From assembly GCF_021869535.1 (NCBI RefSeq), contig NW_026262668.1, positions 28,582,001 through 28,646,000 on the forward strand: 64,000 bases of DNA, in the 5' to 3' direction. The notes under the pieces are model-generated. The model worked only from the letters and a program-made list of their open reading frames with translations. It had not been told where the DNA came from and ran no database searches. This document shows positions 62,577 through 64,000 of this stretch, one piece after another (the stretch's first letter is position 1; every line of letters begins with the position of its first letter). Made by a program: the position numbers and the translations under genes. The DNA is from Mytilus californianus (Eukaryota).

Positions 62577-63378
62577 CTTTATTTGTCACATAACTAGTAT
62601 TACTATTAACTAGGCATACATAAGATATCACCATATGAGAAAGTACTTCCAATTTCGTTGTTGTTTGTTGACAAATTTCACAGGAAATGGTACAGAGTTG
62701 TCTAACTTGGAAAATATTACGCAAAATAATCCTGTGTGTTTTATTCCTAAAAAAGATGATTTAAAATGCATTTTCTTTTGTCTGTATCTCGAGATTTAAG
62801 GAAATGAATTTCAGGAATGCTTTTTTGCAAAACAGTCCTTTCTTCGCTATAAAATATTTATTCATTATTATTTAATCGGATATACCTACGCAGGTGTTGT
62901 TGGTCACCTTTCTAAAACGTGCATAACCAACTTTTTTCTTCGAAAAAGCAAACAAATTATGTCTTCAAGTTCAAGAAGATATTTCTTCGGATAATGATTC
63001 TGATCTTGATATACTAGCAATAGAAGCTTGTAATAAGATGAAGAAGTTGTTAGAAAAATCAAATAACACTGGGAAAAAGAAACAAATGACCCTAACTCGT
63101 GATAGGAAAATGAAATGTGACACTTTAAACGAAAGTGAGAAAGCAAAATCTAGTCAAAACCTTTTTGACTTTGTAATTGATAAAACACCTCTAAGGTATG
63201 AGAATGAAGAAGTCACCAAAACATTACAACCATCTACAGAGACTGATGACAAAACTGAAGAGAGTTCAAGTCTTGACTCAAACAAGGCAAAAAAGAAAGT
63301 GTAAGACATTTCATTACTTACCTTTAACACTTTTATTTCATTTCATTGTTAACCGAGATGCACATTGAAACGATGATA

Positions 63379-63863
63379 TGTGACTGGATTGCTTCCCTTC
63401 AGTATTAGATACTTAGCTATATATACATGATATATATAGTCAGTCATACATGTAAGTGGTTAAGCTAAGGAAGTACTTCTTTAGCTCAGTCAGTTAAAGC
63501 ACTGCCTTGTAACACAGAAGTCCCAGGTTCGAGTCCCAGTGGAGACAATGTGATTTTCTCATAAGAATCATTGAGAATCATGCTCTCCGGTTATATTTGA
63601 CGCCCAACTAAAAACCCATGGTGGTTAGAGAGGTTTTCAAGCTAGGGTATGTGTTATTAGAGTCATTAATTGATAATGGTATGATGACTCTTGGGGTGGG
63701 GGAAGTTTGACAGGATTGCTTCCCTTCAGTAGTAGATACTTAGTCAGCCGTTGAGCTAAGGAAGTGCTACTTTAGCTCAGTCGGTTAAAGCGCTGCCTTG
63801 TAACACAGAAGTCCCGGTGGAGACAGTGTGATTTTCTCATAAGAATAATGCTCTCCGGATACA
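63379..63863 (+). mobile_element. TRIM (miniature non-autonomous LTR retrotransposon) with tRNA-like LTRs, Helenus-type
   Basis: 5' LTR 63379-63595 starts TGTGAC; degenerate PBS TGACGCCCAAC at 63598-63608; PPT GGGGTGGGGGAAG at 63693-63705; 3' LTR 63706-63863 ends CA; GATA on both sides (63375-63378 and 63864-63867). Confidence 0.85.
63474..63547 (+). pseudogene. tRNA-Thr(UGU)-like sequence inside the 5' LTR (second, B-box-deleted copy at ~63766-63827)
   Basis: TAGCTCAGTCAGTTAAAGCACTG-C-CTTGTAA-CACAG-AAGTCCCAGGTTCGAGTCC contains an A box, a TGT anticodon loop and a B box. The anticodon and acceptor stems pair poorly, so this is not a functional tRNA. Confidence 0.7.
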
Positions 63864-64000
63864 GATATATATGTAAATACTAAGTCTGATGTAAAAAAAG
63901 AAAAGTGGGAGATACATAATAATAATTTCACTTATTTGTTCTTCAATTTTTATCAAATTATCAGTTGTGGTTATCTGTTATTCATTTAGAAATGTTTGTG

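What the first reader, a model, noticed from the sequence alone, without database searches (positions are those of the whole stretch)
63379..63863. 485-bp LTR retroelement whose LTRs carry a tRNA-Thr-derived Pol III cassette
Seen: two direct repeats (63379-63595 and 63706-63863) with TG...CA outer termini and a 4-bp TSD (GATA/GATA). They enclose only 110 bp, containing a PBS-like TGACGCCCAAC (one mismatch from the tRNA-Lys PBS TGGCGCCCAAC) and a PPT abutting the 3' LTR. Each LTR contains a tRNA-like A box and CTTGTAA anticodon loop; the B box GGTTCGAGTCC is intact only in the 5' LTR. Established: plant Cassandra TRIMs carry a Pol III (5S) cassette in their LTRs. From memory, a TRIM group named Helenus has tRNA-like LTRs and 4-bp TSDs in animals; this needs checking. 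Inference: a non-coding element transcribed by Pol III from its own LTR and mobilised by a Gypsy partner, in effect a SINE-like promoter on an LTR chassis. The LTRs have diverged (~45-bp insertion in one, B-box deletion in the other), so this copy is old; the family may be uncatalogued in this genome.
Basis: partly seen in the sequence, partly recalled or inferred. Interest (0 to 1): 0.75.

Follow-up and report, generated by a model that had tools for sequence, protein, structure and literature searches.

The report
Old copy of mussel Helenus-1 TRIM
This is a real but old and decayed copy of Helenus-1, a miniature LTR retrotransposon of mussels whose repeats carry a tRNA-like RNA polymerase III promoter; the class and this mussel family were published in 2024, so the element is ordinary. 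Public RNA reads add first evidence that the family is transcribed from that promoter.

Summary
There are two direct repeats (217 and 158 bp, 91% alike), TG..CA outer ends and GATA/GATA target-site duplications. The 110-bp interior holds a tRNA-Lys primer-binding site with one mismatch and a purine tract. Each repeat carries a tRNA-like module.

The element is one of a dispersed family in this 1.65-Gb genome. Most sampled full copies (24 of 30) have perfect 4-bp duplications, two have identical LTRs, solo LTRs are common and some copies form tandem arrays. One copy has an empty site in another sequencing run.

The scan had reached the same verdict on three other stretches of this genome.

The tRNA-like part is not a tRNA gene by ARAGORN or Rfam. 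Its assignment to tRNA-Thr is plausible but not proven.

The new result comes from stranded RNA runs of a related organism. They show a discrete one-strand RNA that starts 12 nt upstream of the A box, which fits Pol III. The RNA reads through the LTR's only T4 run and mostly ends 10-11 nt inside the 3' LTR, which is unexplained. The Gypsy partner was not identified.

The parts
63375..63378 (+). 5' target-site duplication GATA
   Evidence: same 4 bases at 63864-67; 24 of 30 family copies have perfect 4-bp TSDs
63379..63595 (+). 5' LTR, 217 bp (a typical family LTR is 177 bp; this one has net insertions of 29, 1 and 10 bp; the inner end has mutated from CA to TA)
63470..63470 (+). position equivalent to the sharp RNA 5' end seen on copy L010 (12 nt upstream of the A box); the inferred Pol III start site
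   Evidence: (L010 position 1519) carried over by alignment; not measured on this copy
63482..63493 (+). A-box-like TAGCTCAGTCAG of the tRNA-like module in the 5' LTR
   Evidence: A box kept in 55 of 58 and 28 of 32 sampled LTRs
63506..63512 (+). anticodon-loop-like CTTGTAA in the 5' LTR
63526..63536 (+). B-box GGTTCGAGTCC (T-arm), intact only in the 5' LTR
   Evidence: (the T-arm is the only part that Rfam models touch)
63554..63557 (+). the only T4 run of the 5' LTR; a candidate weak Pol III terminator
   Evidence: in most copies the only T4 runs are one per LTR, at the same LTR position; the RNA reads through it
63596..63705 (+). non-coding interior, 110 bp
   Evidence: 91% identical to the interior of L010
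63598..63608 (+). [quoted passage not shown]
   Evidence: PMC10886601 Fig. S2C
63693..63705 (+). polypurine tract GGGGTGGGGGAAG directly before the 3' LTR
63706..63863 (+). 3' LTR, 158 bp (7-bp and 13-bp deletions; the 13-bp one removes the B box; the inner start has mutated from TG to TT)
63773..63784 (+). A-box-like TAGCTCAGTCGG in the 3' LTR
63832..63835 (+). T4 run of the 3' LTR
63864..63867 (+). 3' target-site duplication GATA

Best explanation
Window 63379-63863 is an old, inactive insertion of Helenus-1, a terminal-repeat retrotransposon in miniature (TRIM) of Mytilus mussels.

Shown: it has two LTRs, a tRNA-Lys primer-binding site, a polypurine tract and a 4-bp target-site duplication. 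It belongs to a dispersed family with young copies, solo LTRs and tandem arrays, and that family matches the published Helenus-1_MyCo/MyGa.

Supported by RNA reads from a related organism: family members give a discrete sense-strand RNA. Its 5' end lies 12 nt upstream of the A box of the tRNA-like module in the 5' LTR, which is where Pol III starts on a type-2 (A box/B box) promoter. This RNA runs through the LTR's single T4 run into the interior.

Inferred: a minor fraction that continues to the T4 run of the 3' LTR would carry the terminal redundancy (R, about LTR positions 63-149) needed for reverse transcription. That reaction would be primed by tRNA-Lys and the purine tract and carried out in trans by the proteins of an autonomous Ty3/Gypsy element, whose integrase makes the 4-bp duplication.

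This particular copy has lost the B box of its 3' LTR, has a mutated primer-binding site and mutated inner LTR ends, and has LTRs 9% diverged. It is a fossil, probably lying in an intron.
For: - Anatomy at the stated coordinates.
- Family in the same genome: 57 scored matches of 719 candidates; 53 exact LTR-end/PBS junctions; 129 exact LTR starts not preceded by the purine tract.
- 24 of 30 full copies have perfect 4-bp TSDs. LTR identity ranges from 87.6% to 100%. In most copies the only T4 runs are one per LTR, at LTR positions 146-149.
- 25 of 40 sampled LTR starts are solo LTRs, 15 of them with perfect 4-bp TSDs.
- Tandem LTR-interior-LTR-interior arrays: L009, and PBS junctions 279-302 bp apart at four loci.
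- Empty site: a contig of run X15 joins L010 1449 to 1913 and skips the element.
- Match to published sequences: exact hits of five motifs, and the printed Helenus-1_MyCo/MyGa LTR and interior sequences and sizes.
- RNA: in stranded runs X22 and X23 the cover is nearly all on one strand. 98 of 116 and 214 of 243 molecules end at L010 1519, which is LTR position 63 and 12 nt before the A-box T. Depth jumps about 35-fold there and continues past the T4 run.
- This genome's real tRNA genes end in T5-T6, so T4 may be a leaky terminator.
- Three earlier follow-ups of this scan reached the same family on other DNA.
Against: - The RNA evidence comes from another organism's variants (reads are mostly 90-95% alike), not from this genome or this copy. 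The one RNA run of organism B gave only 18 reads.
- The strand call assumes the usual library chemistry, in which the first mate is antisense to the RNA.
- About 70% of molecules end at 3' LTR position 10-11, before any R region. The main RNA therefore cannot be a canonical replication template.
- Read-through of a T4 run is not what a strong Pol III terminator would give.
- No polymerase assay exists.
- ARAGORN and the Rfam tRNA model do not recognise a tRNA.
- No autonomous partner sharing LTR ends, primer-binding site and purine tract was found.
Confidence: 0.85

Rival explanations
1. It is an ordinary Pol II-transcribed TRIM. The tRNA-like module is only the relic of a SINE that once landed in an ancestral LTR, and it plays no part in transcription.
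For: The module is not a tRNA. The RNA reads through the T4 run and ends at a site without a T run, which is unusual for Pol III. Kojima 2024 says Pol III use is not validated.
Against: The RNA 5' end sits 12 nt upstream of the A box with a 35-fold jump in depth. A and B boxes are conserved between Helenus families of distant bivalves. In most copies T4 runs occur only once per LTR, just behind the module. A polyA-type cDNA run gave almost no reads (X21).
Confidence: 0.1
2. It is a head-to-tail pair of tRNA-derived SINEs moved by a LINE, and the GATA repeat is a coincidence.
For: The tRNA-like head and short size resemble a SINE.
Against: There is no A-rich or LINE-like tail. The unit has TG..CA ends and a primer-binding site and purine tract exactly at the inner LTR borders. 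TSDs are uniformly 4 bp in 24 of 30 copies. Solo LTRs have their own 4-bp TSDs. About 62 nt of conserved LTR lie upstream of the RNA start.
Confidence: 0.01
3. It is a local tandem duplication or satellite with a period of about 280-330 bp, not a mobile element.
For: Some loci are tandem arrays of LTR plus interior.
Against: Copies are dispersed over many contigs with unrelated flanks and TSDs. One copy has an empty site in another run. Two sampled copies have identical LTRs.
Confidence: 0.01

Closest known systems
Helenus-1_MyCo (Mytilus coruscus) and Helenus-1_MyGa / 1B_MyGa (M. galloprovincialis), Kojima 2024, Biology 13:119 (PMC10886601), Data S1 and Table S1
   Same: LTR start TGTGACGGGATTGCTTCCCTT; the module ...CTTCTTTAGCTCAGTCGGT...GCTGCCTTGTAACACAGAGGTCCCGGGTTCGAGTCCCGGTGGAGAC; ATTTTG behind it; LTR end CTCTCCGGTTACA; TTGGCGCCCAAC primer-binding site; GAGGTGGGGGAAG purine tract; 4-bp TSD. 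Sizes also agree: MyCo 182/102/466 against 177-186/99-103/about 456 here. The interior of the window copy reads almost like the MyCo interior.
   Different: The commonest subfamily sampled here has a 177-bp LTR, with CCCTTCATTAGTAGAT where MyCo has CCCTTAGTAAATCTGGTAGAT. The MyCo-like form also occurs (L014, L017, L028). An earlier scan note calls this genome the California mussel, a species not in the paper's list. Identity to the published sequences was judged by eye and by exact motifs, not by a computed alignment.
Cassandra (plant TRIM with a 5S rRNA Pol III promoter and terminator in its LTRs)
   Same: A small-RNA gene module with an internal Pol III promoter and a T-run terminator inside each LTR; non-coding interior with primer-binding site and purine tract; tandem LTR-interior arrays (PMC7215508).
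   Different: The module is tRNA-type (A/B box) rather than 5S-type (A/IE/C). The host is an animal. The TSD is 4 bp rather than 5 bp. Origin is independent (PMC10886601).
tRNA-derived SINEs (SINE2)
   Same: A tRNA-like head that supplies an internal Pol III promoter; short, non-coding, and dependent on another element's proteins.
   Different: It has LTRs, a primer-binding site, a purine tract, TG..CA ends and fixed 4-bp TSDs. It has no LINE-derived or A-rich tail, and the promoter lies 62 nt inside the repeat, not at the 5' end.

Membership tests
TRIM (terminal-repeat retrotransposon in miniature) | Two short direct LTRs with TG..CA ends flanking a short non-coding interior | tested here: met
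   LTRs of 217 and 158 bp, interior of 110 bp, outer ends TG and CA. ORFs called across it do not match any element coding frame, and the interior is too short to code.
TRIM (terminal-repeat retrotransposon in miniature) | Primer-binding site just after the 5' LTR and polypurine tract just before the 3' LTR | tested here: met
   TGACGCCCAAC lies 2 nt after the LTR (family: TGGCGCCCAAC); GGGGTGGGGGAAG abuts the 3' LTR.
TRIM (terminal-repeat retrotransposon in miniature) | Target-site duplication of fixed length; dispersed copies; solo LTRs | tested here: met
   GATA/GATA here. 24 of 30 copies have perfect 4-bp TSDs. 25 of 40 sampled LTR starts are solo LTRs, 15 with perfect TSDs. One copy has an empty site.
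Helenus (Kojima 2024) | tRNA-derived sequence with A-box and B-box motifs inside the LTR | tested here: met
   TAGCTCAGTCGG and GGTTCGAGTCC. The module matches this genome's own tRNA-Thr at 52 of 77 positions, against 41 +/- 2.8 for shuffles. It is not a tRNA by ARAGORN or Rfam, as the paper also reports for most Helenus.
Helenus (Kojima 2024) | Animal Helenus make 4-bp TSDs | tested here: met
   Table S1 of PMC10886601
Helenus-1 of Mytilus (MyCo/MyGa) | Sequence identity to the published LTR and interior (same family by the usual 80% rule) | tested here: met
   Exact hits of 13-17-nt motifs from all parts of the LTR in Data S1, and by-eye agreement of the printed sequences with copies L008, L014 and the window interior.
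TRIMp3 (TRIM transcribed by Pol III) | Transcription from the internal Pol III promoter | tested here: inconclusive
   the sense RNA 5' end lies 12 nt upstream of the A box in two stranded runs of a related organism, which fits Pol III. There is no polymerase assay, the reads are not from this genome, and the main 3' end is not at a T run.
Gypsy-dependent non-autonomous element | An autonomous Ty3/Gypsy in the same genome that shares the primer-binding site, purine tract and LTR ends | tested here: inconclusive
   An intact Gypsy (L032/L036) shares the purine tract and TGT...TTACA ends but uses a tRNA-Leu primer-binding site.
Functional tRNA-Thr gene | Cloverleaf recognised by tRNA finders; paired acceptor and anticodon stems | tested here: not met
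   ARAGORN finds none in the window or in 30 loci. There is no Rfam tRNA hit, only the T-arm. The acceptor arms do not pair, and the anticodon arm is 1 nt short compared with the real tRNA-Thr(UGU).

The most novel reading that the evidence does not exclude
The main Helenus RNA may not be the replication template. It may be a discrete Pol III transcript of about 230-260 nt that starts 12 nt before the A box of the 5' LTR, ignores the T4 run and stops 10-11 nt inside the 3' LTR. That stop is about 52 nt upstream of the next LTR's start site. It could be where a polymerase coming from upstream meets the TFIIIB/TFIIIC complex sitting on the downstream LTR (roadblock termination), or it could be a processing site. 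Only rare read-through molecules would then carry the terminal redundancy needed for retrotransposition, so the element's own second promoter would throttle its replication.
Probability: 0.15. Interest if true: 0.5.

Novelty: already known. Interest (0 to 1): 0.2.

Why it matters
For annotation, this stretch should be masked as Helenus-1, a TRIM with a Pol III-type promoter. It should not be reported as a new element class or as a tRNA gene. The copy is a fossil, probably in an intron.

The wider value is small but real. Kojima 2024 states that Pol III transcription of Helenus is unvalidated. The public RNA reads laid here give a mapped 5' end at the position expected for a type-2 Pol III promoter, and an unexpected dominant 3' end just inside the 3' LTR. 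Both make the transcription model directly testable.

Tried and rejected
- tRNA gene: ARAGORN on the window and 30 loci found nothing. Rfam at E<=1 and E<=10 gave no tRNA and no ribozyme, only weak T-arm hits.
- Structure of the RNA: folding the 228-nt RNA gave z = -0.94, so there is no special structure and the 3' end is unpaired.
- Partner search, lead from a loose read end (...CTGTTCTCTTCTTTGGCGCCCAAC): no match in this genome with up to 2 mismatches.
- Partner search, families sharing the exact purine tract plus TGT. One is a repeat of over 8.5 kb with no second LTR within 17.7 kb and no ORF of 150 aa or more, so it was dropped. The other is an intact Gypsy whose primer-binding site is tRNA-Leu and which shows no further similarity, so it is not shown to be the partner.
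- Partner search, non-Helenus sequences before ACATTGGCGCCCAAC: only 5 hits. The one read (L080) has no Gypsy features.
- Partner search, tRNA-Lys primer-binding sites followed by G: several families were listed. One (L093/L094) has a roughly 1.3-kb upstream repeat and no ORF.
- Asymmetry idea (B-box deletion only in 3' LTRs): rejected as a sampling bias of the query. In an unbiased sample the same 13-bp deletion is in 5 of 32 first LTRs, including 5' LTRs.
Published sequences were not typed into tools.

Full report
**1. Observation.** A 217-bp repeat (63379-63595) and a 158-bp repeat (63706-63863) align in four gapless blocks of 89-94% identity. A global alignment gives 144 matches, 14 mismatches and 4 gaps, or 91.1%. 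The outer ends are TG and CA, and GATA flanks both sides (63375-78 and 63864-67).

The 110-bp interior begins, after TT, with TGACGCCCAAC (63598-608). It ends with GGGGTGGGGGAAG (63693-705), directly before the 3' LTR. Each LTR has an A-box-like TAGCTCAGTC(A/G)G and a CTTGTAA. GGTTCGAGTCC is present only in the 5' LTR, because the 3' LTR lacks 13 bp there.

Against a typical 177-bp family LTR, the 5' LTR has net insertions of 29, 1 and 10 bp, and the 3' LTR also lacks 7 bp. The inner LTR ends have mutated (TA and TT).

**2. It is a family, and it moves.** The whole LTR-interior-LTR unit recurs in the window's own 1.65-Gb genome. There were 57 scored matches from 719 first-look candidates. I found 53 exact LTR-end/primer-binding-site junctions and 129 exact LTR starts not preceded by the purine tract.

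An alignment of 30 copies with their flanks fixes the borders at TGTGACGGG...CCGGTTACA. From:
- The typical copy is 177 + 102 + 177 bp.
- 24 of the 30 copies have perfect 4-bp target-site duplications of unrelated sequence.
- LTR pairs are 87.6-100% identical, and two pairs are identical, so the family was active recently.
- The window copy, at 91.1%, is among the oldest sampled.

In a sample taken in list order, 25 of 40 LTR starts are solo LTRs, 15 of them with perfect 4-bp duplications. Tandem LTR-interior-LTR-interior arrays occur in L009 and at four loci with junctions 279-302 bp apart.

A contig of run X15 joins the two flanks of copy L010 and skips the element. This is an empty site, so the insertion is polymorphic or lineage-specific. 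The window's own empty site could not be sought.

**3. What it is.** Kojima 2024 (PMC10886601) defines Helenus as TRIMs with a tRNA-derived sequence in the LTRs. The paper reports that:
- Animal Helenus make 4-bp duplications.
- Pteriomorph bivalves hold 51 families.
- Some bivalve families are read as tRNA-Thr by tRNAscan-SE.
- Many use a tRNA-Lys primer.

Its Data S1 contains exact matches to motifs from every part of this LTR. It also prints Helenus-1_MyCo (182/102/466 bp, TSD 4) and Helenus-1_MyGa (183/125/491). Their LTR, primer-binding site, interior and purine tract read like the copies here, and the window's interior is nearly the MyCo interior.

So this is Helenus-1 of Mytilus. I compared by eye and by exact motifs, because the published sequences could not be typed into tools, and I built no consensus. 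Three earlier follow-ups reached the same family on other stretches of this genome.

**4. The tRNA-like module.** It is not a tRNA gene. ARAGORN finds none in the window or in 30 loci. Rfam gives no tRNA hit, only the T-arm.

Against this genome's own tRNA-Thr(UGU), found as a 117-copy, 916-bp tandem array with tRNA-Cys, the module matches 52 of 77 positions. It matches tRNA-Cys at 47 of 75, and shuffled sequence gives 41 +/- 2.8. A tRNA origin is therefore clear. Thr is plausible, since the loop CTTGTAA is identical, but it is not proven. The acceptor arms do not pair, and the anticodon arm is 1 nt short.

**5. How it works.** The retroelement chassis and its mobility are shown. The next question is transcription.

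I laid two stranded RNA runs (X22, X23; organism C, coded) on copy L010 at 90% likeness. The reads carry MyGa- and MyCo-type variants.
- Cover is almost entirely on one strand. With the usual chemistry, that is the element's sense strand.
- Depth jumps about 35-fold at L010 1519, where 98 of 116 and 214 of 243 molecules end with no loose letters.
- Position 1519 is LTR position 63. It lies 12 nt before the A-box T and 5 nt before the position equivalent to tRNA +1. From established knowledge of type-2 promoters, this is where Pol III starts.
- The RNA continues past the T4 run. The loose ends show that ATTTTG is also present in the expressed variants.
- In most copies the only T4 runs are one per LTR, at a fixed position. 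The two real tRNA genes I read end in T5 and T6, so T4 may be a leaky terminator.

One feature is unexpected. About 70% of molecules end at 1745/1746, which is 3' LTR position 10-11, and sequencing adapter follows directly. Cover beyond that point is about tenfold lower, with minor ends at 1849/50 and about 1% reaching the 3' T4 run.

The main RNA therefore has no terminal redundancy and cannot be a canonical template. Only the read-through fraction could be, with R at about LTR positions 63-149. I infer that fraction to be the template. It would be reverse-transcribed from a tRNA-Lys primer and the purine tract by a Gypsy's proteins. Kojima 2024 argues for Gypsy from primer-binding-site similarity and the 4-bp duplications.

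The 3' end is unexplained. The RNA has no notable fold and no ribozyme match. A roadblock at the transcription-factor complex on the downstream LTR, about 52 nt before its start site, is a speculation.

Caveats:
- The reads are from another organism.
- The strand rule is assumed.
- The one RNA run of organism B gave only 18 reads.
- Nothing identifies the polymerase directly.

**6. Partner.** I could not identify it.
- An intact Ty3/Gypsy (L032/L036) shares GGTGGGGGAAG|TGT and TGT...TTACA ends with Helenus-1. It has LTRs of 1744 bp that are 99.94% alike, a gag, a PR-RT-RH-IN polyprotein and a third ORF. But its primer-binding site is tRNA-Leu, and nothing else is similar.
- A second family with the same purine tract is not a recognisable LTR element.
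- Several tRNA-Lys families have LTR ends like Helenus. The one sampled has no ORFs.

**7. This copy.** Its LTRs have diverged by 9%, the 3' B box is deleted, the primer-binding site is mutated and the inner LTR ends are mutated, so it is a fossil. Eight of its 38 LTR differences from copy L010 are CpG transitions.

The same 13-bp deletion lies between the two GTCCCGG repeats of the T-arm. It recurs in 5 of 32 LTRs of an unbiased sample, so it is a slippage hot spot and not a feature of 3' LTRs.

The element lies about 180 bp downstream of an ORF that ends at a donor-like AG|GTATGAG. It is probably in an intron of the gene that earlier notes place just downstream. I did not check this.

**8. 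Verdict.** The kind and the family are already published, so interest is low. The only new matter is the RNA picture: a Pol III-like start, T4 read-through, and a dominant end just inside the 3' LTR. It deserves a proper test.

Noticed in passing
G000:C110:65.55-65.67 Mb (L081-L092): There are 117 exact tRNA-Thr(UGU) matches, all on one strand at a 916-bp period. Each unit holds tRNA-Thr(tgt) and, on the other strand, tRNA-Cys(gca). This is a large tandem tRNA gene array.
   Followed up: partly
L010:1519-1746 (copy at G000:C121:4484826-4485281); equivalent to window 63470 to about 63716: Stranded RNA runs of a related organism give a discrete sense RNA from LTR position 63 to 3' LTR position 10-11, with adapter directly after the end. 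The 3' end is not at a T run and lies before any R region, and it is unexplained.
   Followed up: partly
L032:667 to L036:9496 (G000:C110, about 43705666-43716995): An intact Ty3/Gypsy element with LTRs of 1744 bp that are 99.94% alike. It has a gag of 351 aa, a PR-RT-RNaseH-IN polyprotein of 1257 aa and a third ORF of 729 aa with no clear Pfam match. Its primer-binding site is tRNA-Leu, and its purine tract is identical to that of Helenus-1. At least 12 copies share the junction.
   Followed up: partly
LTRs of L017, L018, L023, L040, L050, L061, L064, L071 and window 63809/63810: The same 13-bp deletion of the B box, between two GTCCCGG repeats of the T-arm, recurs in independent copies. It looks like a slippage hot spot.
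   Followed up: yes
L003, L004, L006 (G000:C140:827573, C90:3432099, C140:257505): Three Helenus copies share the same flanks, and the 5' flank (about 36 bp) is repeated after the element. The insertion therefore sits in a larger duplicated or tandem unit, or in uncollapsed haplotigs.
   Followed up: no
window 62904-63197: An open frame rich in Asp, Ser and Lys ends at a donor-like AG|GTATGAG. It is probably an exon of the gene that earlier notes place downstream (DNTTIP2), which would make the Helenus copy intronic and in the sense orientation.
   Followed up: no
G000, several contigs: At least ten other repeat families carry a tRNA-Lys primer-binding site (TGGCGCCCAACG...). Three of them have LTR ends close to that of Helenus-1 (..CCTGGTTACA..CCTGTTACA..CCCGGTTTCA). 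They are candidates for relatives or for the partner.
   Followed up: partly
L035/L037 (G000:C154:43290500-43300499; C143:26175300-26185299): A repeat of more than 8.5 kb, 97-98% alike between copies, contains the same GGTGGGGGAAG|TGT junction and internal 30-60-bp tandem repeats. It has no ORF of 150 aa or more and no second LTR within 17.7 kb. Its nature is unknown.
   Followed up: partly
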